From the NCBI GenBank assembly GCA_977017575.1, contig CDRNVI010000178.1, positions 129,755 through 193,754 on the forward strand: a stretch of 64,000 bases of DNA, given 5' to 3'. How positions within the stretch are numbered: the first letter of the stretch is position 1; every line of letters starts with the position of its first letter. The notes beneath the pieces are model-generated. The model was not told the DNA's origin. It searched no databases and worked only from the letters and a program-made list of their open reading frames with translations. The position numbers and the translations under genes were made by a program. This stretch comes from Paramoeba atlantica (lineage: Eukaryota > Protista > Discosea). Shown one piece after another: positions 3,071-51,834 of this stretch.

Positions 3071-5667
3071 GAAAATCTGTTTGTTGTTCTGTGAACTGAG
3101 CATCAAAATTGGAAACCATTTTTCAATTCTTGTTCTTTGTTTCAAATCAAGGAAACCAAGTTCTTTTGGTCTTGTTTTGAATGAAGAAATTCTTCTCAGA
3201 AAATTTCTTTGCACCTCTAATCCTTGTTCCCATACTTTTACACTTTAAACCTATTTGTTTTGTTTTTGGTCTTTTGTTTTTGTACTTTTGGATTGAGACT
3301 TTGTCCCTCATTGTCTCACTTTACCCTTTACATTTTGTTCATTGCTCTCAATGATCATTCTATTGTTTGTTCATCTTGTTGAATCTCTTGGTATGTTTAT
3401 TTGTTGGTTTTGCTCCTGTCTTGAAATGTTTTCAATAATTCTTCATTTTATGAAGTGCATGTCTTGTTTGTTTATTGTGTTCATAATATATTAAAAGAAT
3501 TTTTGATCTTTCTTTTGTGAAATGTTTTTCCTGTTTGGATTTTATGTTTTGAACAACAATTTTGTTTGTCATTTTTGATTTTATAGCTGTGATTAAGCTT
3601 CCCATTTTGGTTTTTGGATCTTTCTTGTAGATGATCCTGATTATTGATTTTTTAGCACTCTTGGTGTGGATAATTAACATTTTTTTGTTTGTTTTCATGA
3701 TACAGAGCTGGTTATTCTCTTTTATCCTTCTTCTTTTGATTTATGTGGACACACCATCTCTTCTATCCTCAGTGATCCTATTATCACTTATTCTCCCCCC
3801 TTCTATCAACTTTGATAAGACATCAACTTTTTAGCTTTCAGTTTATAATTTTATACTGGTGTGCACTGTTTTAAATTATATTTCTGGCAACCATCTTTGA
3901 CCTAGCACATGGTTTTTTAATAAGCACAGTTCTGATCACACCTATTTTTGTTTTTCTCCTTATGTCATGAAAAATTCATGTTATTTTTCTTGTTTCTTGG
4001 AGATTATTCTTGTATTTGTTAATGTCTTTCTTTGCCTGTCATAACACTCTGTTTTGACTCTGTTTTTGTTTTGTCCAACTGTTCTTTTGGTTCTATTCCT
4101 GTTTTATGGATTCTCTCTGCCTTTGATTTGCTCAAGATGATTTCTTGTTGATTTCCATACTTCATTTTTGTTGGTAAATCTATTCAGTCTTCTTGCTCAT
4201 TGTTTGTTTTGGTTATTTGTCTTTGGCTATGCTTTTGGAACAGCATATTGTTTGAAATTAACATTCTGGACAACTTCAGTTTATACAACACTGTTTCCTT
4301 GTATAATCTTGATTTGAGTTTTGTTTGTCAACATTTCTTCATGTTCCTCAATCTCTTCTTTGTGTTGGATATTGTGATTGTTGGTTTTATTTGAAAATTT
4401 TTGTGATTCTTTCTGTTATTTCAATTGGTCTTTGTTGATGTTCATCTCATGCTTACAAACTGCATTTTGATGATTATTTTATTGTTGATTTTGAGTTGAG
4501 CCTTGATCAAACTTTTTCTCTTGATTCAATGAAAGTTTATTATCTTTTGTATTGATTAAATGATAGTTGTGTAGTTTTAATACTCATTTTTATTTCATCT
4601 TGGATTCATGGATTTGTATTTTTGAATTTTTTGTTCCTCAACTGCCACTTCTAATTGTGAATTTTATGATTGTGGATTTGCCTGATTGAATTTATTCTTA
4701 TGTTTGATGATTTTTCATTTTATTTTATTTTCTCAAAGCTTGATTGGATTTTTCTCTCTGTCTTGATGATGTTTTTAAAAATTCCTGATATCTTTAAAGT
4801 AATTCTGGATTGAATTTATACTTCTTGAATCTGAAGGTACTCTATTGTTAACTTCTTTGAATTTTTTACCTTGTTATTTCAAATTCCCTGCCTGTGAATT
4901 TGAATTCTTATTTTTGATTGAATTCATCCTTGTATTGATTTTATTGAAGAAATAATTGATTCCATCTCCTTGTTTTTCTTGTAATAATGTTATTTTAAAT
5001 TTGTTATTCTTGGATTGATACCTTGGGATGATTTTTCTTGTTTTTTTGTTTTTGGTTGATGATGGAAATTCTCCTGATTTCCTTTTTTACTTTGAAATTG
5101 TTAGATTTTTTCCTTCTTCTTACCTTTTGTGATTTCAATTTTAAACTTTATTTTCACTTAGATTCCTTTCTTGAATATTCCTACTTGAATTTTGAAATCC
5201 ATTTTAGTGTTGGAAGAGTGTTCCATTAAAAAATTGTTTTTGTATTATTTCAGATGTACCACCCCTGAAGCTGTTTTGATTTTGGTTACTGCACTTTCCC
5301 TCAAGTTTTGACCTTTTTAATTTGATATGTTTGTTTTGAAGTTGATTTGATTGCTGATGCTTCTTTCTTGTCATTGATACTCTCTGTTCTAAGTTTCTTT
5401 TCTCTTTGAGAAATCTCAATTCACATTTTTCTCTGTTATAATTTTATATTTTTGTTTATTCTCTAGTAATGATGCTGATTTTTGAATTTGATTTGTAATA
5501 GCTTTATTTTCAACAAGTTCCATTGAGCATCTTGCACCATTTATATTCTCTAATTATTGGTTGATTTATTGGAATTAAATCTTTTCTTGGTCTTTAATAA
5601 GTTGATTTTGGATTTCCTTTGTTGATTTGATTTTGTGATTTGATGATTAATACTTTCTCTTGTTTTG

Positions 5668-6060
5668 GGGTTGATGTCTATAGTTTAGTTGTAAATTCAA
5701 CTATGTCCAACTTTGGGGGGGTAAGTTTAAATTCTAGTTTTTCAATATTATAGAAAATTGTTCTGATGCTGTAGAGTGATAAAATCGGAACAAGTTACAT
5801 CTCAGCCCTGTTTGCTAAAAAGTTGAGGATAAATTCCCTTGAAAGGAGTTTTGGATTATTTTCCCTTCTGATGTGCATTCTCCAGCCTGAACTTGTAGAA
5901 GTTCTAAAGTTCAGTATAAAGACCAACTGAACTAAACTGAAGTTTAAAACTTTACCTTTTATTAGAGGTTAAAAAAACAAACATAATTTAATGTAATTCA
6001 AATGGCTTAAATTAAAAACTACTAATTGAATAAAGTTTGTTTTAAAAAAAAAAAAAAAAA
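5668..6060 (+). mobile_element. tRNA-derived SINE, family A
   Basis: A-box-like tagtttagttg, degenerate B-box and poly(A) tail. Imperfect 16-bp TSD: actttctcttgttttg (5652-5667) / actctttcttgttttg (6061-6076). Homologous to 14235, 14551 and 21512. Confidence 0.8.
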
Positions 6061-7652
6061 ACTCTTTCTTGTTTTGAAATGCCCTTATTGTAATGAAATC
6101 AAAATATTAAATTGAAAGAGAGTGTTTGTGTGACTTGTAACTAATTTCTTGGCTTTACCTAAAAATATTTTGATATTATTTGATTTCTTTTGTTATTCTC
6201 CATAGTTTATTCTCATCAAATTATTGTTGTGCAATTTAATCTTTTGATTTAATTTTCACTCTCCAATTCTTTCTTGTTTTATGGTTGATTATGAATATTG
6301 TTTCTTTTTCCTTTGTTTTAATATTATTATTTTTGGAAATTGCTATTCCATTTCTTTCTGTTCTGCCTGCAATTTAATGACTGCTTTTGTCTTTGCAATC
6401 CTTTAAACAATGCTTTCTAACATCACTTTCCTTTTGAAACACCTGTTACCTTCAAAGGGAGTTCTCATGTCTCCTCTTTGTTCTTTTAAGGGAGTTTTGA
6501 GTTTTATTTTCTCTGATTCTTTGAGTCTTTGTTTTTCTTACCTTTACAATGGATTTTCACTGGTCCTGTAACATTTTTTCTTTTAACTTATATTCTTCTC
6601 ATCTCTTTTCTCAAATCTCAATGCAATTGTAACATTTGTTGATTTGATCAACATTTATCTTTTATGTAACAACATATTTGTTTTTATATACATGATGTGT
6701 AATTTATTTTTGAAAATTCATCTCTTGAACTTTGGAAATACATACCTGAAATGCTTTGCCTCTGAACCATGTTTTCAGCACTATTTTGGATGATTTTTTT
6801 TTGTTTTTTTTATTGCTGTTGCACTCTATTCTTGTTGCTCTCTGTTCAATGTTCTTCTCACCTGTTCCCAATCATCTTTGAAGCTTGTAACACCTTGATA
6901 ATTTTTGCTGGACTTTTGATTTCTTTATTTTTATTGAAATTATTTTGATTTTCTACTCTCAATCTCACTGGTTCATCTTATAATGACTTGTTTTGCTTTT
7001 CTTTGAAAAATTCTTTTTTTCAACATCTTCAGCACCTTCCTCTCTCAATGATGAGTAAATGTAGCATATCTAGAGGAACTATGCAATAATAATTCCTGTT
7101 AAACACTTATCCTTTCTCCCTTCCAATTTTCACTCAATAATAAGTGAATATAGCATTTCTAAGGATTCAATACACCACCTGTATCTCCAGTAGTGAACAT
7201 AAATTCCTCTCTTCCTATTTCCTGTTGTTTTTTGTTGAATTGACTTTTTTTTCCCTGGGTTGTATTATTTTTGAATTTCTGAATTGAATTCTTTTGTCTT
7301 GTTCTCTATGTCCATGCCTTAAGTTCTCTGATTATCTCTTGTACTCTTGTATCAATCTTTCTTTTGCTTCAAAGTAATATGTTTTGGATTATTGATTGCT
7401 TTTGCATCAATTTCTTATGTTTTTCCATTCTGTTCCACTGATATTTGTTCCTGTGATTTTGTGATTTATTTTGATTTCCTTGATGGCTTGATATTTGGTT
7501 CAATGATGAGTTTCTATTTGTTCACCTTATCTTGATTTGTTATGCTAAATGTAAATTTCACTTGCTTCAGGCATGAGATTCCCTTCACATACCCATCTGT
7601 ATCTGGAATAGGTTTGCTTTCAGTCTGACCTTGACTGTTGTAAATTGTAGCA

Positions 7653-8349: not shown

Positions 8350-9480
8350 CTATTGAGATTGATCTTGGATCCAATTTTGTTTGTGTAGTTGTTTTTAATT
8401 CTTTAATCTTTCTAGAATTGAGAAGGAGTGCCTGAATATAAGCCCCATTTCAGCCTTTGATTACTGGATATTTAATTGTTTTATTATTTATCAATTGTTG
8501 AAATTCAATGTGTCTTTCATCAAAGTTAAGAACAGCACTGATTTTTAACAAAAATGAAGTTCCAAAGATAATATCTAATGAAAGATCATCAAATACAACA
8601 AATCAGTACCTTTTTCTTCTTCCAGAGATGTTAATTTCTAGGAAAACTTCCTTAATTGGCAATACTGATGATTTGTTAGCCAAGAAGATGTAATTTCCTC
8701 TGTAAAGTCTTTGAAGTTTAGGAATTGCTTTGTTCAGAAATATTCTTATCCTGCAAACTCCAGAATTACATAGTGTTTGTGTATTGATATTATTAACCAT
8801 GTAAGGAATAGTGAATAATTTATTTTTTATTTGGTAAATTTCAAGATTTAAGTCTCTGACTAAGTTACCAATAGAGATTGTGAAACCTTTTTCATCCATT
8901 TTGATCATTACTTTATGGTTCTGCTGCCCAATATTATGAGTAAAAAATTAACAAACCATTTCCTTGATTTCTGAGCTCATCCAAAGTCATTTTTCCAGTC
9001 ACCAAATCTTGAAGAGTATTCTTCAATTTTCTTCTCTTTTCTTTTTCCTTCTCTTGAGGGACTTCTCTTCCTCTTTTCCCTAGAAGTTTCTTATTCCAAT
9101 CAACAAATTTCATACAATTGTATTTTCAAGCTGCAGACTCACCATAACAAGTCACAAATGATCTTCCACAAGTTTAATTTTTCTTTTTGTTATAAATTTC
9201 ACAACACTTAACCAAAGACACTCTAAGCTCTTATGGTCACATCTTCCATAAAGAAAACAGTATTCCCTTCTAAGGTGGTTAATACCTTTTTATTTCAATT
9301 CATTCAGAATATAACATTTTTTAGGGAAATAACTACTCTAATAAAAGAAGCAGGTAATAAATCTTTCTTGACCCCTCCCCAGCCTTTCCTTTGTCCTTTG
9401 GTATTCATCTGTTTTTCTCATAAACAATTTGTTTAGACCCTAAGGATTCACCACAACTTGGATGAATTTGTTGGAATAAG
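8350..9480 (-). pseudogene. LTR-retrotransposon gag/protease remnant
   Basis: Degenerate knuckle CFLYGRCDHKSLEC (~9200-9240) and a retropepsin-like C-terminus FVVFDDLSLDIIFGTSFL (~8550-8600). Confidence 0.55.
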
Positions 9481-12065: not shown

Positions 12066-12873
12066 GATTTTCAATCCTTTCATCAAAAAAGCAAAATCAA
12101 AGGAGATGAAAACCTTTCTTTGAGTTTCAAAGGGAATCTCTTGGAAGTAACAATCCAAGTAGAAATGTATTCAACATGCAATCATGTGATTGGATGTGAA
12201 AAGATGGCCTTGAAAACAAATCCCACTTCCTTCAAACTCAAGAACACCATGGTTTCCTTCACTTTTCTCAATTTTTAAATTTCAAATTTTTGATTAGATT
12301 TGCTTTGATAAGTTTTCCTAAAAAATGTTTAATTCTTGTAAAATCTCACAAGCACTTTGAAAGTGGCCCATTTTTCTCAAACTTCTCAAGTTTTTTACCT
12401 TGCTTGCCTGCTCCACAAATTACATTTGAGATATTTAGCCACTACTCCTTTTTAAAATTTTTCAACAACAAAAAAATTCAAAAAGTTTCTCAAATTGAAC
12501 TTTTTGAAATGTTGAAATAAAAAAAGAGTATTTTTGCTTTTCCATAAAAAAAAAAGTTTTTATAGAAAAAGTTTTAAATCTTCAATAAAACTAAAAAATC
12601 TTTTTCACAAAGAGTTTAATTCATTTGAAATATTTAGTTACCACTTCTTTCTAAAATTTTTCAATAATAAAAAAATTCAAAAAATTCCTTAAATTGAACT
12701 TTTTAAAGTGTTGAAATGAAAAAAGAGTATTTTTGCTTCCCTACAAAAAAAAGTTTTTTTATGGAAAAAGGTTTCAACCCTTTCTTTCCTCAGTTTTCCA
12801 CTTTTATTTTCTTTTTTTCCTTTCCACAATAAAGTGTTTATATTGCAATTTTAAGCTTCAAAATGGTTCAGTT

Positions 12874-13499
12874 TGTGAGGAGGGGAGCAGGATCAACAGA
12901 GAAAACAAGAGAAAAGAAAGAGAAACAGAAACTCTGGATCAAAACCTTTATGGGAAAGATCCCCAGCCAACACAAACAGAACAAGAAAACAACAACAAAG
13001 AAACAAAAAAGCAAGAAGAAGAACAACAAAAAGAATCACAACTGAGAAAAGCACAGAATCACCGAAACTCAACTCAAATCAGAATCCCAAGTCTATACAG
13101 CAACCAAAGAAGGAAGAAAGCAACAAAAAATGATGACAACAAAAGAAAAGAACAGAAAGCAAGCAAGGCAAGCCAAAAGATCACAAAGGAAAGCAAAGAG
13201 AGAGAGAGAGAGCAACAAGAAAGCAGAAAGAAAGCAGAAAGTGGCAAAGCGGCAAGAAAAGGGGGGCAAAAACACGAACGCAAAAACTGAATAAAAAGAG
13301 CGCTAAAAATCTTGTGATTTTAGCTAAAATCACAATAAAATGGCACGCGGCTGTCTGTGAGGCTCAGGGCTCTCCAAAAGGACCAAAACTCATGATAAAA
13401 GGCATCAAGGAAGCTCAGGGAAGGCTCAGGGAGGCTCAAGGAACTGAAAAGGCACTGAAAGGCACAACTTCTGTGTTGGAAGCAGGTCTCACCCCAACA
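12874..13499 (-). mobile_element. Solo LTR of the chromovirus family (626 bp)
   Basis: Near-identical to 34582-35206. TG...CA termini and a 4-bp TSD AGTT (12870-12873 / 13500-13503). Confidence 0.95.
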
Positions 13500-14234: not shown

Positions 14235-14901
14235 AGTGATTTGATTGGAGTGAGGAGCTTTTGAAGAAGTGTGAAAATCAGAACAGGTTACATCTCAGCC
14301 CTGTCTGCTAAAAAGTTGAGAATAAATTCTCTTGGAAGGAGCTTTGGATTATTCTCCCTTCTAATGTGCATTTTCCAGTCTAAACTTACAGAAGTTCTAA
14401 AGTTCAGCATAAAGACTGATTGAACTAAGCTAAAGTTTAAAACTTTACCTCTTATTAAAGGTTAAAAACAAACATAATTTAATGTAATTCAAATGGTTTA
14501 GATTAAGAACTACTAATTGAATAAAATCTACCTCAAAAGGAAAAAAAAAAGTTTTTCAATATTTTAGAAAATTTTTCTGATGCTGTAGAGTGATTTGATT
14601 GAAGTGAAGAGCTTTTGAAGAAGTGTGAAAATCAGAACAGGTTACATTTCAGCCCTGTTTGCTAAAAAGTTGAGGATAAATTCTCTTGAAAAGAGTTTTA
14701 AATTATTTTCCCTTTTAATATGCATTCTCCAGCCTGAACTTATAAAAGTTCTAAAGTTCAGCATCAAGACTGACTAAACTAAACTGAAGTTTAAAACTTC
14801 ACTTCTTGTTAAAGGTTAAAAACAAATATAATTTAATGTAATTCAAATGGCTTAGATTAAAAACTACTAATTGAATAAAGTCTGCCTCAAAAAAAAAAAA
14901 A
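14235..14901 (+). mobile_element. Two tandem 5'-truncated SINE family A copies (14235-14550, 14551-14901)
   Basis: Each matches the 5668/21512 body and ends in an A-tract. Confidence 0.85.
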
Positions 14902-21000: not shown

Positions 21001-21511
21001 AAAGTTTAAAACAGTTGGTGATGCAAAATTTTTCACTGAAATTGATTTGTTTAGTGCTTACCACCTTATTAAAGTGGAGGAAGATAGTCAACCTCTGCTT
21101 GGTTTTGTTGATCCTTAAGGAATTCAGTATGTTTGGATGAGATTACCTTTTGGTCCCAAAGGTGCAGTTACCCATTTTCAGGCTTAAGGTGAGAGAATGA
21201 TTTTAGGAATTGAAGATGTGATTTCTTACTTGAATAATTTTTTAGTTGCCTCTCAAATGTTCAAATCTCACTGTGAAAGTGTAAAAAGGGTAATTGAAGC
21301 ATTGACAGAGGTGGGTTTTCCAATCAATCATAAAAAATGTAAGTTTCTGATGAAAAAATTGAAATTTATGAGTCATTTAATTGATGGTAATTCTTGCTTG
21401 ATTGACAGTCACAAGATTAAAGTGGCTGCCAAGATTGCTTGTCCAGTTACTAGGAAACAAGTGGAACAAATGTTGAGTTTTTTCAATTTTTTGAGAGACT
21501 TTATTTCAAAT
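18009..21511 (+). mobile_element. Ty3/Gypsy 5' half: partial LTR, gag with two CCHC knuckles, protease region, RT
   Basis: LTR start tgttaggttgtgagag is homologous to 22329-22626. ORF 18286-19122 contains CYYCGKHGYVQSNC and CFNCQKTGHMMRDC. RT motifs: RLCIDL, LPFGPKGA, YLNN, FFNFLRDF. Confidence 0.88.
19213..20466 (-). mobile_element. Internally deleted pogo-like element with ~33-bp TIRs, nested in the Gypsy
   Basis: Left TIR ggctaaatttagcaccagtgggccattatttgc; right end (reverse complement) ggctaaatctagcaccagtggaccattatttgc. Minus ORF contains LPSYTMSILQPNDWSVNQQFK. TG flanks both ends. Confidence 0.85.
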
Positions 21512-21934
21512 GAGTTGACACCTGTAGTTTAGTCATAAATTCAACTATGTTCAACCCCAGGGGGGTGAGTTCAAATCCCAGTTTTTTAATATTTTAGAAA
21601 ATTTTTCTGGTGCTGTAGAGTGATTTGATTGGAGTGAGGAGCTTTTGAAAAAGTGTGAAAATCAGAACAGGTTACATTTCAGCTCTGTTTGTTAAAAAGT
21701 TGAGGATAAATTCCTTTGGAAAGAACTTTGGATTATTCTTTCTTTTGATGTACATTCTCCTGCCTGAACTTGCAGAAGTTCTAAAGTTCAGCATAAAGAC
21801 TAACTAAACTAAACTGAAGTTTAAAACTTCACCTCTCATTAGAGGTTAAAAACAAATATAATTTAATATAATTCAAATGACTTAAATTAAAAACTACTAA
21901 TTGAATAAAGTTTGCCTCAAAAAGAAAAAAAAAA
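21512..21934 (+). mobile_element. tRNA-derived SINE family A, full length
   Basis: Head gagttgacacctgtagtttagtc, B-box gagttcaaatccc, poly(A). The right TSD copy is partial (agacttta). Confidence 0.88.
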
Positions 21935-22328
21935 AGACTTTAAACAGATTATTGCCATGTTGTTGTAATGTTGCATTTTGTTGCAAGACAAAGTGGCAAG
22001 CAGTTCATACATCATCACAAGGAGACAACAAGCCAATAGAATGAGAAAAACTTTAAAAGAAAGGTTTCAATCCATTTTAGTCATTTAGACAATTCATTCT
22101 TCTGCTAGCCACATCATTTCACTTGATCAGTACATCAAAAACCCTGACAATTTCTCAAGAAGATATAGTAGATTTTCTTAAAAACATTGTTGCTTAACCT
22201 GATGCTGAGAAGGGGGTTATTATAATTGAGAATGAGGATGAGGCTTCCTTGGACTTGAACAAACCTCAGTTCTCATCTGATCCAATTTCTGGAAGCAAAT
22301 GGTCAATAACTATTCACAACACCAAAAC

Positions 22329-34110: not shown

Positions 34111-35208
34111 GAATTATTTTGAAACAAAATTAAATTTATTTTACAAAAAAATCTTGAAAAAAATGAAACTATTTTTTAGATTTATTTCCATTATTAGTAA
34201 AATGTTAAAAAAAAAAGAGGAAAAAATTTAATTAGTAAATGAAAAAATTAACTTTTTCAGTTTGTCAAGTTTTTGCTGCATTTGCCTTTGATGTAAAAGA
34301 ATTTGATTCATCTGAATTTTGAAAAAAATGGATTAATAAAAAATATTAATTGAAAAAAAGAAATATTCAAATCCAAAAAAAAAAAAATACTTGGGTTTGT
34401 GAGGATGTGTTATTACCACACATTGTTGATAGTTGGGGATTTTAAAGTGGTTGTAGGTTTGCTACTGCTGTTGATTGATATATTGGTTGTTGAGCCAATC
34501 CATAAATTTGTGAATTGCCATTTTATTGAAATTGGATTTGAGGTGAAGGATTAAAATTTTGTTGGAATTGTTGGGGTGATTTGTTGGGGTGAGACCTGCT
34601 TCCAACACGGAAGTTGTGCCTTTCAGTGCCTTTTCAGTTCCTTGAGCCTCCCTGAGCCTTCCCTGAGCTTCCTTGATGCCTTTTATCATGAGTTTTGGTC
34701 CTTTCGGAGAGCCCTGAGCCTCACAGACAGCCGCGCGCCATTTTATCGTGATTTTAGCCAAAATCACGAGATTTTTAGCGCTCTTTTTATTCAGTTTTCG
34801 CGTTCGCGTTTTTGCTTCTTTTTCTTGCCGCTTTGCCGCTTTCTGCTTTCTTTCTGCTTTCTTGTCGCTCTCTCTCTCTCTCTTTGCTTTCCTTTGTGAT
34901 CTTTTGGCTTGCCTTGCTTGCTTTCTGTTCTCTTCTTTTGTTGTCATCATCTTTTGTTGTTTTCTTCCTTCTTTGGTTGCTGTGTAGACTTGGGATTCCG
35001 ATTTGAGTTGAGTTTCGGTGATTCTGTGCTTTTCTCAGTTGTGATTCCTTTTGTTGTTCTTCTTCTTGCTTTTCTGTTTCTTTGTTGTTGTTTTCTTGTT
35101 CTGTTTGTGTTGGCTGGGGATCTTTCCCATAAAGGTTTTGATCCAGAGTTTCTGTTTCTCTTTCTTTTCTCTTGTTTTCTCTGTTGATCCTGCTCCCCTC
35201 CTCACACG

Positions 35209-44062: not shown

Positions 44063-46051
44063 GAAACTAACTTTCGTGGTTGGATAACCCCTATTGCTTC
44101 TCTTTATTGAGTTGTTTCCTTTCTTTTGTTGTTTGAGATTTGGTTGTCTTTGCTATTAATCAATTTCGAAGATTGTTTTGACTATGTGACTGGTTCGGGA
44201 TATTGGTTTCAAGAATTGCAATCCTGTTATGCTTCCTTCTGCCCTGGGAGACTGTAAATATTGTGAATGCTGTAAATATGATGAAGATTTGGGTTTACTG
44301 GTTTCCCTGGACAGAGGTCCTAAATATATCAAAACATTTTTTTTCAAGTAAGTCCCCAGCCATTGTGTTTTGTGTTTGTTCTCTTTTCTGTGTTTTGTTT
44401 TGTGTTTTGTTTGTTTTATTCTCCTGTCATCCCCCTTGGTGAGCTGCATTTTACGATTTGTTGACACCCCGAATTGATTCCTTGGGTCTTCTGCTGCTGA
44501 TTCCCTTCTTTTGATTGCTTGGTCGGAGAATTGATTCTGATTTTGTGGATTCCCATGGATTTCTTTCATCTTTTTGGACCCTGTTGAGTTTCTGGCCTCT
44601 TTTCTCTTGGTGCCTGCAACCCCACACTCTTGTTTTGTTTCAAAGGGGGAGGTGTTGGTGAGACCTGCTTCCAACACGGAAGTTGTGCCTTTCAGTGCCT
44701 TTTCAGTTCCTTGAGCCTCCCTGAGCCTTCCCTGAGCTTCCTTGATGCCTTTTATCATGAGTTTTGGTCCTTTCGGAGAGCCCTGAGCCTCACAGACAGC
44801 CGCGCGCCATTTTATCGTGATTTTAGCCAAAATCACGAGATTTTTAGCGCTCTTTTTATTCAGTTTTCGCGTTCGTGTTTTTGCTTCTTTTTCTTGCCGC
44901 TTTGCCGCTTTCTGCTTTCTTTCTGCTTTCTTGTCACTCTCTCTCTCTCTCTTTGCTTTCCTTTGTGATCTTTTGGCTTGCCTTGCTTGCTTTCTGTTCT
45001 CTTCTTTTGTTGTCATCATCTTTTGTTGTTTTCTTCCTTCTTTGGTTGCTGTGTAGACTTGGGATTCCGATTTGAGTTGAGTTTCGGCGATTCTGTGCTT
45101 TTCTCAGTTGTGATTCCTTTTGTTGTTCTTCTTCTTGCTTTTCTGTTTCTTTGTTGTTGTTTTCTTGTTCTGTTTGTGTTGGCTGGGGATCTTTCCCATA
45201 AAGGTTTTGATCCAGAGTTTCTGTTTCTCTTTCTTTTCTCTTGTTTTCTCTGTTGATCCTGCTCCCCTCCTCACAGATTGAATAGAAAGTATTTGATAGG
45301 AAGTTTGGTTTTGTGGAATTGATTGAAAATTGTAATTTGGTTGGGTTTGAGAAGATTGAGGAAGTGGAAGTTGAATTATTGTTTGTGGAGTTGAAAATGT
45401 TTCATAAAAAGTTGGTTTTTGTTGAGGAAAAAATGGGTTGGATTGAATTTGAATAACTTGAGGTATTGATGGTGGTTGATTTTGAATAAAAAGATAGGAG
45501 TTTGTTGCTCTTTCTTTGAATGGAATGGAGGTGGAATTTGATTGAAAAGACTGAAGTGGTAGTTGTTGAATTATAGATTTGTTTTGATTTATTGGATTGG
45601 AGGAAGTGGAATTAGAGTGGAATTGTTGAATGTGATCAAGTGTTGGTATGTTTGAAATCATTGGCTCAAAAGTTAGTGGATTGATGTTTAATTGTGATTG
45701 TTTCATTTTTGTTGAAGAAGAGTGGAGTATTAATTGACTGGAGATAGGTTTTTCAGGTTGTAAGGATTGGTCAGTTTCAATTGGTGAAGGAGATTGTTGA
45801 AGTTTTGGTGATTGGAGAAGTGGGGAACCTTGTGGAGATGAGGTTGCTGGTAATGAGTGATCAGTTTCCTTATTTGTGTTGGCTTTTTTTTGCTTTTTTT
45901 CATTTGGGAGGGAATTGAAAATGTAATCTTCTAAATGGTTGTGTCGTGTGGGACGCAGGGAGGGTTTTGAAGTTTGTTTCTTATTATTTTGAGGATATGC
46001 AGTTTGAGATTGCTTGGGGATCATTGAGGGAAGAGGAGAGGTTTCTTGGGC

Positions 46052-47129: not shown

Positions 47130-48339
47130 GAGAGGTTTCTTGGGCTGATTTTTCCTTCCTCTTGCGCTTTGGCATTTTCTTTCCTTGCTGAAACTCCTTT
47201 GAGGCTTTTTGGTTGGTTGATTTTTGCCAAGGGAGATGATGGTCAGTGTTCAAGGCCTTGATGAAGAGGTAATCAGAACTTGGAAAAAGAGAATCTACTC
47301 TGTTCAATTGAATCTTTTCTTTAATCAACAGTGTTGAGTGAATGAGTTCAAAAACATTCCTTGAATTGAGTGGTTTGGAGGGGTTCAACTTCTCTAAAAT
47401 TGCTTGGTTGGTTGTAGGGAAATTATTTTCTCAAATAAAAATGAAAACTTCATTCAGCAATGAATCAAGGAGTTTTTTCTTACTCAGAACCAGCAAATAA
47501 TCCTTTAGAAGTAAAAGTGGGCACAGAGTTAGTGATGTTGATGGATTCCATGGTTTATCATAAGAATTACTTCTAATGAAAAGGTTCCCTTGATTTGGAA
47601 AGGGTAAGCAGAGTTGGAGCAAGCAGGAATATTCTTATTTCCTCTGACTACAGAGGGTTTCAACTTAACCAACAAGTGGTTTCTTTTCATCAAAGATAAG
47701 AGGCCTCAAAAGGGGAGGGAAAGTTTTGTTGCTTTGCAAATTCTGTAATTTTCCAGGATTCAAATACCAAAAGGAACCTTCTTCCAGAACCTCTTCCCAA
47801 ATCCAGAACTGAGGGTAAGTTGAAAACTCACCAATTCCTGAGCTGACTTTCCAGCAAACTGATGAAAAAAAAGTAATTTCCTTTTTTGTTTGTTCACTAA
47901 AGTTGAAATATTTGTTTTTCTTATAGTCAATTTGAGGTGAGTTTGTGTCCACTTTTATTATGGTTTCGAAGGTGGGGAGACTCATGCCAACCATAACATT
48001 CACTTCAAAAAATCCATTTTGGAACCACCACAATAATTTGAGTATTCAATGTAACCTAGGGCAAAATGCTGTGTTACAATCGAAATAATTGAATCCTTTG
48101 GAAATATCAGAGACTCCAACGAGATAATTGGTGACAAGTTTGGTGTTTTTTTCAATTTTTGATTTTGTAATTAAACTGGAAAACCAACCAAAGCAACAAT
48201 CAAGAAACCTCAATAATAAACTGAACTGTTTTGAATCTCAGAATTGCAATATAAACACTTTATTGTGGAAAGGAAAAGAAGATAAAAGTGGGAAACTGAG
48301 GGAAGAAAGGGTCAAAAGATCTTTTTTATAAAAAAACTT

Positions 48340-50099
48340 TTTTTGCTCTTTCATACTGTTTTTCCTCAATTCTTGAATTTATTGAATTATTTGAATCACA
48401 AAACACAGCCTTTTTTTCCCCTTTTTCAGTGCTTTATGGCTCATAATGCATAGAGGGAAAAAAAAACCCACAAAGCACCAAAAAAAGGCAAAAAAAGGCA
48501 AAAAAAAGTCATGCACCAGTTTTTATTGAAATTTCAAAAAACACAAAAAAAACAAGCTTAAAAAAATCAAACAAGCAGCCCTGTAAATGTGCTGTGGACC
48601 ACTTCCATGGTTGACTGGAGCACCAGAAGATGAGGATAAAGAGGATGAAGAGGAAGAAGAGAAAGAAGAGGATGTGGAACCATACATCAACTGGGTGGCT
48701 CTTTGTTTTTGAGCAGTTGTTGAATTTGCAATGTAACCTTTTGCAATCTGCAAATTTTTTCAATCCCCAGCATTCATTAAGTCCAATTTCATAGCTTCTG
48801 AATTGACTATTTCTGTTGCTTCTGTTCTCCAAAATGAATGTCTACTGTAAGACACTTCTTCTTGTGGCAATTCAAGGAAATCTACCATCTTCTGGACCAA
48901 GTTTGCAATGTAGTTTCTTCCAATTGAACTCTTGTTGAAAATTTGGTTCTTTGTACTGAAACTATTCCAGAGATGAGTGTTCTTTCTGAAATCTTTTCTG
49001 TGTGATTTTTCAAGGAGACCAAGATGCTTTTTCCAGAGTTTTACAACATTTGCTTTTCCTCCATGAATAATGTAAGGGTGTGTTGTGAGTCCACCCTTCT
49101 TGTGTTGCAAATTGATCACCAAATGGTCATCTTTTAGCACCACATCTTGAACTTTTAATTGAAAAACCTCAATGGCTCTCCTCAAAGTGAAATAAGTACA
49201 AAGAGTGATTAAAGAATCTTGTTTTGCTTTGGCTTCATTGAATATGGGTGCTTTTTGACAAAGAAATTCTTTAATTTCAAGCCAAGTGAAAACACCAGCT
49301 TTCTTTTTCTTGTACTTCTTTTCAAATTTTTGCATCAACACATTCACATCATGCAATTCCTTCAAGTTCACCCCATGAGCAAAGAGACAAAATTTCTTCA
49401 CATGTGAAATTTTTGGAAAGAAGGAGCCAAAGGAAAGAATACACTTGCTGGTTTTTCCACTCAGAGGATACAAAAATTCTTTAAAAAATCGAAAAATCAA
49501 CTTCTTGGAGAAAACCACTTCCTCTTGTTGGTCCAACCAGTATTGAAATCTACTGATTGCAATTAAAAACGGTCCAACAGATGTGCTTTCCTTCAGTTGA
49601 CAAACACTTGGCTTTTTTTTGTTAAAAAACAGCACTTCCCAAGTGAGATGAGGGATGTTGATTATTAGTAGCAAATCCACTTTTTGCTTTGCTCTTTTTT
49701 CTTTCTTTCTTGAAGTTGCAGTGTCATTTTCATCATGCTTTTGTTTCACACCCTTGCTCTCCATCCTTAACAAAAAAGAAAAGAGTGACTTCTTTTTTCT
49801 TATTTTACTGTTACTTTTTTGAATTCAAATTTTTTGAATTTTCATTTCATTAAAAATAAATTGAAGGTTCAAAAAACAGAATTGAAGAAAAAACAACTTG
49901 CAATATAGCAAAAAATGTTGTTTACAACAAGTGTGCATTATAAAAACAGAATTTAACTCATTCCCTTTCTCAGCTTTCAGGTTTTTTTTATACCTTCAGG
50001 CTAGAGGCCCTCAAGTCTAAAAGAAAACCCTCAAGCTTTGAAAGGAAACAAGTGCATTATGGTTCATAAGGCACACCGGTGCAAAAACAGCTATTTTTG
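48340..50099 (-). mobile_element. Crypton-like tyrosine-recombinase element bounded by TTTTTG direct repeats
   Basis: TTTTTG at 48340-48345 and 50094-50099. The paralogous locus has a single copy (caaaaa, 12744-12749) with both flanks joined. Confidence 0.7.
48523..49773 (-). pseudogene. Tyrosine recombinase (one internal TGA at 48760-48762)
   Basis: KKAGVFTWLEIKEFL, TLRRAIEVFQLKVQDV, SRHSFWRT (HxxR-like), AGD*KNLQIAKGY (catalytic Tyr near 48734). Confidence 0.9.
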
Positions 50100-50615
50100 T
50101 GGGAAAGCAAAAATACTTTTTTTTTATTTCAACACTTCAAAAAGTTCAATTTGAAAAACTTTTTGAATTTTTTTATTGTTGAAAAATTTTAAAAAGAAGT
50201 AGTGGTTAAATATTTCAAATGAATTAAACTCCCTCTGAAAAGGATTTTTTAGTTTTATTGAAGGTTTAAAACTTTTTCTACAAAAACTTTTTTTTTTGTG
50301 GGGAAGTAAAAATACTCTTTTTTCATTTCAATACCTCAAAAAGTTCAATTTGAAGAATTTTTTGAATTTTTTTATTGTTGAAAAATTTTAGAAAGAAGTA
50401 GTAGCTAAATATTTCAAATGAATTAAACTTCCTCTAAAAAAGATTTTTTAGTTTTATTGAAGGTTTAAAACTTTTTCCACAAAAACTTTTTTTTTTGTAG
50501 GGAAGCAAAAATACTCTTTTTTTATTTCAACACTTCAAAAAGTTTAATTTGAGGAACTTTTTGAATTTTTTTGTTGTTGAAAAATTTTAGAAAGGAGTGG
50601 TGGCTAAATATCTCA
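50094..50615. repeat. AT-rich tandem array of ~200-bp units (~2.5 copies)
   Basis: Unit anchor gggaagYaaaaatac recurs at ~50101, 50301 and 50500. About 1.6 inverted units occur at 12430-12760. Confidence 0.9.
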
Positions 50616-50619
50616 AATA

Positions 50620-51834
50620 CAATTTGTGGGGCAGGCAGGCAAGGCAAAAAACTTGAAGAGTTTGAGAAAAATGGGCCACTTTCAAAACGCTCGTGAGATT
50701 TTACAAGAATTGAACATTTCTTGGAAAACTTATCAAAGCAAATCCAATCAAAAATTTGGGATTTAAAAATTGAGGGAAGTGAAGGAAACCATGGTGTTTT
50801 TGAGTTTGAAGGAAGTGGGGTTTGTTTTTGAAGCTGTCTTCTTGCACCTGATCACATGATTGCATGTTGAATGCATTCTACTTGGATCATTACTTCCAGG
50901 AGATTCCTTTCGAAGCTCAAAGAAAGGTCTTCACCTCCTTTGATTTTGCTTTTTTGACAAAAGAATTGAGAGTTAAATAATAAATGGGATCAGAAAGGTT
51001 GGTTTTGAATCTATCCAGAATTGAATGATAGACCCAAAATTTTGGAACAACTTTCAGATCAATCAGGTGGGTTTTTAAAGCACTTGAATTTATTGGTTGA
51101 GGAAAACTTTTTAAATGTCATTTCTGGGGATTTATACATTTCATCTCAGAGTGGTCATAATGACACATTTTTTTTATTCCCAGGTAGCTTCAGAAGAGGA
51201 GATTTACAAAATGTCAATTTTTCAATCTTTGCTTCTCTCTTTGAACCCCCTTCTGCCAAAATGTAAGCAGAATGCTCAGGGGTGGAACCTCATAGCTCTT
51301 GGACTTCACAAAATTCAAAACTCTTTAATGAAATGGGTTCAAACTCAACATCTAACAGATGACATGAAGAAAATTCTTTTGTCCCTTTTAATTGTATATG
51401 AGATAAGAGAGTATTGCTTGATGAAGTGGATAATTGGATTAAAAAAGAATTCAAACTTTTTTGCAGAACAAATTGGGATGTATGAGAAATTTCAAACAGC
51501 TTGGAAGGAAACAGGAAAAGATATGAGAGTTCAACTTCCAATGAAATGTACTCAACAAATTTGGATTGGAGGAGGCTGTGGAACCCTCCTCCACAAAGAT
51601 GCTTCAAACTTCGGTTTGTCATTTTACCAATATTTGGGTTTCAATTGGGGGGAAAGTGATTGTGGTGTTGGTCTCCCCAAACTTTGAATCCTTTGGAAAA
51701 ATTCACCAGAATCTGCAATGGCTATTTGTGCTTGTTGTTACTTTTACATGAGTTTGCCACTTGATTTAGGGTTGAAAATGATAGGTGTGACTTTTGTTAA
51801 TCATAAAAAAAAATCAAATCCTCTGAAAAACTAA
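50620..51834 (+). pseudogene. TET-2: putative TET/JBP-like 2OG-Fe(II) dioxygenase pseudogene
   Basis: ...QQIWIGGGCGTLLHKDASNFGLSFYQYLGFNWGESDCGVGLPKL*ILWKNSPESAMAICACCYFYMSLPLDLGLKMIGVTFVN, with HxD at 51592-51600. Several TGA stops and a frameshift in the T-run near 51170. Confidence 0.62.

What the first reader, a model, noticed from the sequence alone, without database searches (positions are those of the whole stretch)
48340..50099. Crypton-like recombinase cassette with filled and empty sites both in the window
Filled site: ...aaaaaacttttttTG|ctctttcatac...YR gene...aaaaacagctaTTTTTG|tgggaaagcaaaaatac. The paralog (reverse complement of 12721-12790) reads aaaaaaacttttttttg|tagggaagcaaaaatac with a single TTTTTG. 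An inverted octamer lies just inside the ends (CTGTTTTT 48356-48363 / AAAAACAG 50083-50090). A CpG-retaining palindrome CACCGGTG is at 50074-50081. Short direct repeats without TIRs are the known Crypton signature. The YR gene is therefore probably a separate 1.75-kb element that inserted (or excised) at the edge of the array between ORF-X and TET-2, not a fixed part of the composite. If excision were programmed, it could act as a switch on the divergent promoter; that is speculation.
Basis: partly seen in the sequence, partly recalled or inferred. Interest (0 to 1): 0.75.

Follow-up and report, generated by a model that had tools for sequence, protein, structure and literature searches.

The report
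Dead Crypton transposon with empty sites
A 1.75-kb jumping gene that encodes only a Cre-like recombinase sits in one copy of a repeated element whose six other copies lack it; this fixes its ends to the base, but the gene is broken and cannot act as a switch.

Summary
Window 48346-50093 (1748 bp) is present in one copy of a repeat that has at least seven copies. It is absent from six other copies, including the one at 12.7 kb. TTTTTG lies on both sides of the insert and once in each empty site. The contiguous state also occurs at the internal unit boundaries of the adjoining 199-bp array, so this is an insertion, not a deletion.

The insert carries one intronless gene for a Cre-like tyrosine recombinase. 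It has no reverse transcriptase and no terminal inverted repeats. That meets the structural definition of a Crypton.

This copy is dead and single-copy. The catalytic Arg of HxxR is now Trp, the conserved Trp is now an in-frame TGA, and CpG is almost erased. The excision-switch idea is therefore not supported. The inverted octamer and CACCGGTG are no more than chance would give.

New here: an ~80-nt hairpin upstream of the gene is homologous to one in an intact paralog at 34% protein identity, and its motif occurs only at these two places in 45.7 Mb. Two paralogous cassettes also have empty sites.

Other reports of this scan already described hairpin-ended Crypton-type elements elsewhere in this genome.

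The parts
48340..48345 (+). Left copy of the 6-bp direct repeat TTTTTG; it is the end of a T7-G run of the host repeat
48346..50093 (-). Body of the insert (1748 bp), absent from six paralogous sites. It is a Crypton-type cassette with its gene on the minus strand
48526..49764 (-). Former reading frame of the tyrosine recombinase, about 413 codons. ATG is at 49764-49762. The frame is interrupted once and then stays open to the stop at 48525-48523
48829..48831 (-). TGG (Trp) where all relatives have the catalytic Arg of HxxR: HSFWR here, HSFRR in the others. Fits CGG>TGG at a CpG
48760..48762 (-). In-frame TGA where relatives have the conserved Trp (Cre W315 position). The catalytic Tyr (KGYI) follows in the same frame
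48408..48499 (.). Long hairpin starting 23 nt after the former stop codon; site A is embedded in it
   Evidence: RNA -46.4 kcal/mol, z -6.2; DNA z -3.7 and -5.5
48430..48450 (.). Site A: a 21-bp near-palindrome (9-bp arms, 3-bp centre) that matches site B at 18 of 21 positions
49964..50045 (.). Hairpin about 200 nt upstream of the start codon. It is homologous to the hairpin upstream of the intact paralog (L054:8531-8616)
50053..50073 (.). Site B: a 21-bp near-palindrome. The arms of A and B that face the gene are identical; the outer arms differ at one base each
50081..50099 (+). Element end plus repeat: GCAAAAA-CAGCTA-TTTTTG. Joined to the left end's first base (C) it makes 7-bp inverted arms around a 6-bp centre. 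It resembles the target CAAAAAC-Tn-G
50094..50099 (+). Right copy of TTTTTG; also the first bases of the host's 199-bp array
50094..50618 (+). Host 199-bp tandem array (2.6 units). Its internal unit boundaries repeat the uninterrupted target sequence
12721..12790 (-). Empty paralogous site inside the window
47130..51600 (.). Minimum extent of the host repeat around the insert. It is 90-93% identical to four other copies over about 2.7 kb once the insert is removed

Best explanation
Window 48346-50093 is a fossil Crypton-type DNA transposon: one intronless gene for a Cre-like tyrosine recombinase, with short non-coding ends that carry structured DNA.

It entered one copy of a multi-copy, TET-bearing host repeat, at the oligo-T/G boundary of a 199-bp array unit. 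The likely route (inferred, not shown) is the one proposed for Cryptons. A circular copy recombines, through its own recombinase, between a short sequence on the element (GCAAAAA-CAGCTA-TTTTTG-C across the joined ends) and a look-alike target (CAAAAAC-Tn-G). This leaves TTTTTG on both sides.

After insertion the gene decayed by transitions: the catalytic Arg became Trp, the conserved Trp became a stop, and CpG was almost erased. The element is now immobile and has no copy able to move it.
For: Insertion and its ends:
- There are six empty sites and the insert is single-copy.
- The 6-bp boundary repeat has p about 0.003-0.005.

Polarity (insertion, not deletion):
- The uninterrupted sequence recurs at the internal boundaries of the 199-bp array.
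- Host copies form a star-like tree on which the filled copy is one terminal branch.

Recombinase:
- An intact paralog passes Pfam PF00589 (31.9 bits against a cut-off of 27.1).
- The window protein matches that paralog at E 3.8e-55.
- A profile of the family hits Cre recombinase best in the PDB, aligning the Arg-I region and the H-R-W-Y region.

Only one gene:
- No other ORF in the insert has a family hit, and there are no terminal inverted repeats.

Decay:
- HSFWR against HSFRR, and TGA against Trp, seen in seven relatives and in a 54%-identical relative.
- CpG observed/expected is 0.06 here against 0.89 in the intact paralog.

Standard genetic code:
- In another paralog family the TGAs sit where intact copies have CGA or TGG.

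Mobility of the group:
- Two paralogous cassettes also have empty sites.

Target mimicry:
- CAAAAA-N4-9-TTTTTG occurs in the window only at the right junction and at the two array-unit boundaries.
Against: - There is no second copy with the same ends, so the ends are defined by one event.
- TTTTTG lies in a T-rich context, and T-run length varies among the empty sites (8-10 T). A true duplication, a shared crossover sequence and microhomology therefore cannot be told apart.
- The two 21-bp near-palindromes lie inside the insert (84 and 20 nt from its ends). They look like hybrid att sites, which the simple model does not explain.
- Circle formation and recombinase-mediated integration are inferred from the literature, not shown here.
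- The arms-plus-spacer reading of the junction was found after the fact.
Confidence: 0.75

Rival explanations
1. The true recombination unit is the inner 1.62 kb between the two 21-bp near-palindromes. Site A would be attL and site B attR. The outer 84 + 20 nt would be remains of an earlier target that travelled with it, or of a small earlier insert at the same spot.
For: - The arms of A and B that face the gene are identical (TGCATTATG). The outer arms each differ at one position, as expected for hybrid sites after a palindromic circle site integrates.
- The degenerate pattern matches exactly only at these two places in 45.7 Mb.
Against: - All six empty sites lack the outer 104 nt as well, so two events at one spot are needed.
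- The outer-left segment pairs with inner sequence in a strong hairpin that spans site A (z -6.2). That argues for one coherent unit.
- The outer segments occur nowhere else in the genome.
- A 3-bp centre is too short for a tyrosine-recombinase crossover region.
Confidence: 0.1
2. The cassette arrived without its own recombinase. It could be a linear or circular fragment captured at a double-strand break by microhomology-mediated repair, or a retrocopy.
For: - 6 bp of T-rich microhomology is compatible with end joining.
- The element is single-copy.
Against: - The inserted piece is a complete gene with the same upstream hairpin as an independent cassette that also has empty sites.
- Both cassettes end in AGCTA next to an oligo-T run.
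- There is no polyA tail and no parent gene in the genome.
- Microhomology of 6 bp or more is rare in simulation.
Confidence: 0.1
3. The filled state is ancestral, and the empty copies descend from one microhomology deletion or from precise excisions.
For: An unrooted tree with one filled tip cannot by itself exclude a root on that tip's branch.
Against: - The uninterrupted junction is repeated at the internal unit boundaries of the 199-bp array, in the filled copy itself. It therefore predates the array.
- The six empty copies are 88-99% identical to each other and spread in a star-like tree.
Confidence: 0.03
4. The cassette is a working, programmed excision switch on the divergent promoter between ORF-X and TET-2.
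For: Only its position between two divergent host reading frames.
Against: - The catalytic Arg is lost and there is a stop before the Tyr.
- CpG o/e is 0.06.
- No helper copy shares its sites.
- A separate follow-up reports that the neighbouring TET-2 copy is dead (s1-405758, not checked here).
Confidence: 0.02

Closest known systems
Crypton DNA transposons (Goodwin et al. 2003; Kojima & Jurka 2011, PMC3212892), including CryptonF-1_cRei, seen moving in Chlamydomonas (PMC9977147)
   Same: - Encodes only a tyrosine recombinase.
- No TIRs or LTRs.
- A 4-6-bp direct repeat at both ends that equals a single target copy at the empty site. In Chlamydomonas the end motif is CACCG and the target is CAYCG, and clean excisions leave only the target.
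   Different: - Very compact (1.75 kb).
- No GCR1_C domain, no DUF3504 match and no second ORF.
- Carries structured hairpins and two 21-bp near-palindromes near its ends. The papers I read here do not describe such features.
- The target is an oligo-T/G run.
- Placement among the named Crypton groups could not be tested because no reference sequences were available.
Cre recombinase of phage P1
   Same: - It is the best PDB match to the family profile (E 6e-8).
- Both share the Arg-I region and the H-x-x-R ... W ... Y pattern, with Trp instead of the second His.
   Different: - The relationship is distant: only two short stretches align.
- No 13-8-13 lox-type site is present.
- The host is a eukaryote and the element is a transposon, not a plasmid-resolution system.
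Other Crypton-type cassettes of this same genome (notes s1-389384, s1-369963, s1-405731; here L052 and L054)
   Same: - Same protein family (29-34% identity).
- Same order of parts: gene start, hairpin, element end.
- Empty sites exist for each.
- The hairpin of L054 is homologous to the window's.
   Different: - In L052 and L054 the joined ends form a long hairpin far beyond chance (0-1 of 80 random partners). In the window element the pairing across the junction is not significant (7 of 80).
- L052 uses a different target (about ATWAWAGA) and lacks the AGCTA end.
DIRS/Ngaro-type tyrosine-recombinase retrotransposons
   Same: They are eukaryotic mobile elements that use a tyrosine recombinase.
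   Different: The insert has no reverse transcriptase, RNase H or terminal repeats.

Membership tests
Crypton | Encodes a tyrosine recombinase with the catalytic R-H-R-Y set | tested here: met
   Met for the family: an intact paralog passes PF00589, the profile matches Cre, and R, H, R, W and Y are conserved in relatives. This copy itself has lost Arg-II and has a stop before Tyr, so it is a dead member.
Crypton | No reverse transcriptase or other transposition protein in the element | tested here: met
   The 1748-bp insert holds one long ORF; the short overlapping ORFs have no family hit.
Crypton | No terminal inverted repeats and no long terminal direct repeats | tested here: met
   The very ends (CTCTTTC... 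and ...CAGCTA) are not inverted repeats. The only notable repeats are sub-terminal.
Crypton | Short (4-6 bp) direct repeat at both ends, single at the empty site | tested here: met
   TTTTTG lies on both sides and once in each of six empty sites; p about 0.003-0.005.
Crypton | Several copies sharing the same ends (evidence of repeated transposition) | tested here: not met
   The insert DNA is single-copy in 45.7 Mb. Only diverged paralogous cassettes exist; two of them have their own empty sites.
Crypton | Recombinase groups with named Crypton clades (F, S, A, I) rather than with DIRS/Ngaro or phage integrases | not testable with these tools
   No reference Crypton sequences were available. 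The nearest named relatives are uncharacterised stand-alone recombinases of insects. There was no DUF3504 hit.
Crypton | Excision as a circle and re-integration | not testable with these tools
   Needs reads or experiments.
DIRS/Ngaro retrotransposon | Reverse transcriptase/RNase H together with the recombinase | tested here: not met
   None in the insert.
Cre/lox-type site-specific system | Core site of two inverted arms around a 6-8-bp crossover region at the point of exchange | tested here: inconclusive
   The joined ends give GCAAAAA-CAGCTA-TTTTTGC (7-6-7) and the target has CAAAAA...TTTTTG. This was found after the fact and the sequence is A/T-rich.

The most novel reading that the evidence does not exclude
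These compact Cryptons may form a lineage whose cis-acting site is a conserved, structured hairpin next to the point of exchange.

What supports it:
- The hairpin is about 70% identical between cassettes whose proteins are only 34% identical. It has 4 compensatory and 3 compatible pair changes and no broken pair.
- In intact members the joined ends extend it into a long hairpin of more than 200 nt.

If so, the recombinase may act on a folded or cruciform DNA substrate. The precedents I know from memory, not tested here, are the integron integrase on attC and XerCD on the CTX phage. The empty sites found here for three cassettes would then give exact substrates for testing how Cryptons move.
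Probability: 0.2. Interest if true: 0.6.

Novelty: new member of a known kind. Interest (0 to 1): 0.4.

Why it matters
Crypton ends are hard to define, and their mechanism is still a model. Activity was first observed only recently, in Chlamydomonas (PMC9977147).

Here an element's ends are fixed to the base by six empty sites, and two paralogous cassettes in the same genome can be bounded the same way. Together with a hairpin conserved across deep divergence, this gives concrete substrates (end, target, hairpin) for a recombination assay with an intact relative.

For the window itself the result is sobering. The cassette is a dead passenger inside a dead host repeat, not a regulatory switch.

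Tried and rejected
- TGA read as Trp: rejected. In a multi-copy paralog family the TGAs align with CGA or TGG of intact copies.
- Inverted octamer and CACCGGTG as end signals: within chance.
- Helitron, DDE transposon or retrocopy: no TC...CTRR ends, no TIR, no polyA tail and no parent gene.
- Split hairpin across the joined ends of the window element:
  - The first fold showed 6 pairs across the junction.
  - A wider fold showed 26.
  - Random partners did as well in 7 of 80 trials, and the genomic continuation gave 24 pairs. It is not significant here, though it is in L052 and L054.
- Similarity of the left and right ends between the window element and L054, beyond the hairpin and AGCTA: not significant.
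- Paralog family C (L029-33, L045-51) as a guide to the ends: useless, because its gene lies in a repeat of more than 10 kb.
- L052 and L053 are 97% alike over 8 kb, so they are not independent.
- Word-index protein search with the window protein: no hits.
- Metagenome scan: one weak locus.
- Scan of bacterial genomes for the hairpin motif: chance-level hits only.

Because of this, the empty sites of L054 and L052, the five places that repeat a site-B-like 21-mer, and the ENA contigs of the 54%-identical relative could not be read.

Full report
**What is there**

The window is G000:C178:129755-193754, from a 45.7-Mb, AT-rich, CpG-poor eukaryotic (protist-like) assembly.
- The left flank ends c-T7-g at 48337-48345.
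- The insert runs from 48346 to 50093 (1748 bp).
- TTTTTG at 50094-50099 follows, then tgggaaagc.

**Filled and empty sites**

A DNA search of the whole genome with the insert plus 100 nt on each side found the two flanks next to each other at six places. No other copy of the insert interior was found. The only other match was a 55-nt hit to a low-complexity coding stretch.

In the alignment, all six empty sites read aaaaaaac-T(8-10)-g-tgg. With the insert removed, the flanks align to four other copies over about 2.7 kb at 90-93% identity (window 47130-51600). The insert therefore lies inside a multi-copy host repeat.

In simulated random insertions, a boundary ambiguity of 6 bp or more arises in 0.3-0.5% of trials.

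**Insertion, not deletion**

- The 199-bp tandem array starts exactly at 50094. Its internal unit boundaries (50281-50298 and 50480-50497) carry the same uninterrupted CAAAAAC-Tn-G sequence. The contiguous state therefore predates the array.
- The host copies form a star-like tree on which the filled copy is one terminal branch of 0.07-0.08 substitutions per site.

**The gene**

The minus-strand frame starts at the ATG at 49764 and is open to 48526, apart from one TGA at 48762-48760.
- Pfam gave nothing for the window protein at E<0.01.
- It matches a 445-aa intact paralog (C149, L028/L054) at E 3.8e-55 and 34% identity. That paralog passes PF00589 (31.9 bits against 27.1).
- A profile of eight relatives matches Cre recombinase best in the PDB (E 6e-8). 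It aligns the Arg-I region and the H289-R292-W315-Y324 region.
- An exhaustive profile search found 9487 relatives. The top named ones are uncharacterised stand-alone recombinases of wasps and beetles, and all ten proteins scanned are PF00589.

**This copy is dead**

- All seven aligned relatives read HSFRR; the window reads HSFWR (TGG at 48831-48829). That is the catalytic Arg of HxxR, and the change fits CGG>TGG.
- The TGA replaces the conserved Trp. The nearest outside relative (P0159, 54% identity) reads AGEWKNSKIARGYIAQSTAAQ where the window reads AGD*KNLQIAKGYIANSTTAQ. The frame clearly continued through the catalytic Tyr.
- TGA is not Trp in this organism. In a multi-copy paralog family the TGAs sit where intact copies have CGA or TGG.
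- CpG observed/expected is 0.06 in the insert (three CpGs) against 0.89 in the intact paralog gene.

**Classification**

The insert has one gene, no reverse transcriptase and no terminal inverted or long direct repeats. It has a 6-bp direct repeat that is single at the empty site. This is the published structural definition of a Crypton (PMC3212892). It also matches what was seen for an active Crypton in Chlamydomonas, where the end motif resembles the target and excision leaves one copy (PMC9977147).

Two membership features could not be met or tested. There are no further copies with the same ends, and placement among the named Crypton clades was not possible.

**Ends and target**

The element's right end plus the repeat reads GCAAAAA-CAGCTA-TTTTTG. 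Joined to the left end's first base (C), it gives 7-bp inverted arms around a 6-bp centre. The target also has CAAAAA and TTTTTG arms.

In the 64-kb window the pattern CAAAAA-N4-9-TTTTTG occurs only at this junction and at the two array-unit boundaries. I take this as a plausible core-type site that mimics the target. It was noticed after the fact and is A/T-rich, so it remains a hypothesis.

**Sub-terminal features**

- Two 21-bp near-palindromes (48430-48450 and 50053-50073) match each other at 18 of 21 positions. Their gene-facing arms are identical and their outer arms differ at one base each. The degenerate pattern is exact only at these two places in the genome.
- They look like hybrid att sites. 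But the empty sites show that the outer 84 + 20 nt came in together with the rest. The outer-left part also pairs with inner sequence in a strong hairpin (48408-48499; RNA z -6.2). Their role stays unexplained.
- A second hairpin (49964-50045, z about -3.1 to -3.6) lies upstream of the gene.

**Family context, tested here**

The upstream hairpin is homologous to one upstream of the intact C149 paralog (L054:8531-8616).
- The two align well. By my reading of that alignment they are about 70% identical over about 80 nt.
- All 24 predicted pairs are kept, 4 through changes on both sides and 3 through one-sided changes.
- The motif GGCCCTCAAG-N8-16-CCCTCAAG occurs only at these two places in 45.7 Mb, with none in the control.

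Both paralogous cassettes have empty sites:
- The C149 cassette lies beside a tRNA-Lys gene. It is missing from at least five copies of its host repeat. Its right boundary falls at AGCTA|T8, the same pentamer next to an oligo-T run as in the window.
- The C144/C170 cassette lies between tRNA genes. It is missing from two copies, with an 8-nt boundary overlap of about ATWAWAGA and different ends.

With these boundaries, the joined ends of both intact cassettes fold into a long hairpin far beyond chance: 0 and 1 of 80 random partners did as well. The window element does not (7 of 80).

Earlier notes of this scan (s1-389384, s1-369963, s1-405731) had proposed such split-hairpin ends. I confirm the layout for two loci and do not find it significant in the window copy.

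**Verdict**

The finding is real and correctly read as a Crypton-type insertion with filled and empty sites. The copy is dead and single-copy, so the switch idea fails. The kind of element is known. The conserved hairpin and the exact boundaries are the useful additions.

**Limits**

- As a result, the empty sites of the paralogs and the contigs of the closest outside relative could not be read.

Noticed in passing
P0159 (ENA protein, 243 aa): The gene model of the closest outside relative runs from a C-terminus like the window recombinase straight into an N-terminus like the C144/C170 cassette protein (NNCGFDQSRR...TPAPTRRAV). This suggests two Crypton-type genes in tandem, or one nested in the other, in that assembly.
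   Followed up: no
L045-L051 (C177, C184 x2, C141, C182, C144, C167): A third recombinase family (29% identical to the window's) has seven copies. They are embedded in a repeat of more than 10 kb with 91-95% identity. Several copies carry 1-4 TGA stops at former CGA or TGG codons.
   Followed up: partly
window 21510-21935, 5666-6064, 14550-14901, 14235-14550; L045:8000-8430: A short repeat of about 430 bp (83-91% identity) is inserted in one copy of the large family-C repeat and occurs four times in the window. It looks MITE-like.
   Followed up: no
G000 C26:98284, C39:721434, C42:174857, C59:1144, C147:63472: Five identical copies of a 21-mer (TGCATTATGGAACATAAGGGA) match site B at 18 of 21 positions. 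None lies near a detected recombinase gene. The flanks could not be read.
   Followed up: no
L054:6656-6728; L052:6161-6510 and 8402-8487: The two intact paralogous cassettes sit in tRNA gene clusters: tRNA-Lys directly beside one, and tRNA-Ile and tRNA-Ser around the other. These clusters belong to multi-copy repeats with 25 or more copies.
   Followed up: partly
window 34589-35178, 44658-45247, 12902-13492; L045:2244-2589: LTR-like segments (72-79% identity) recur in the window and in the family-C repeat. One abuts the empty paralogous site at 12.7 kb.
   Followed up: no
window 1-64000: CpG observed/expected is 0.18 over the whole window, with an excess of TpG/CpA (1.27). Unique regions around the intact paralogs have 0.4-0.9. 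This fits methylation-driven decay of this repeat-rich region.
   Followed up: partly
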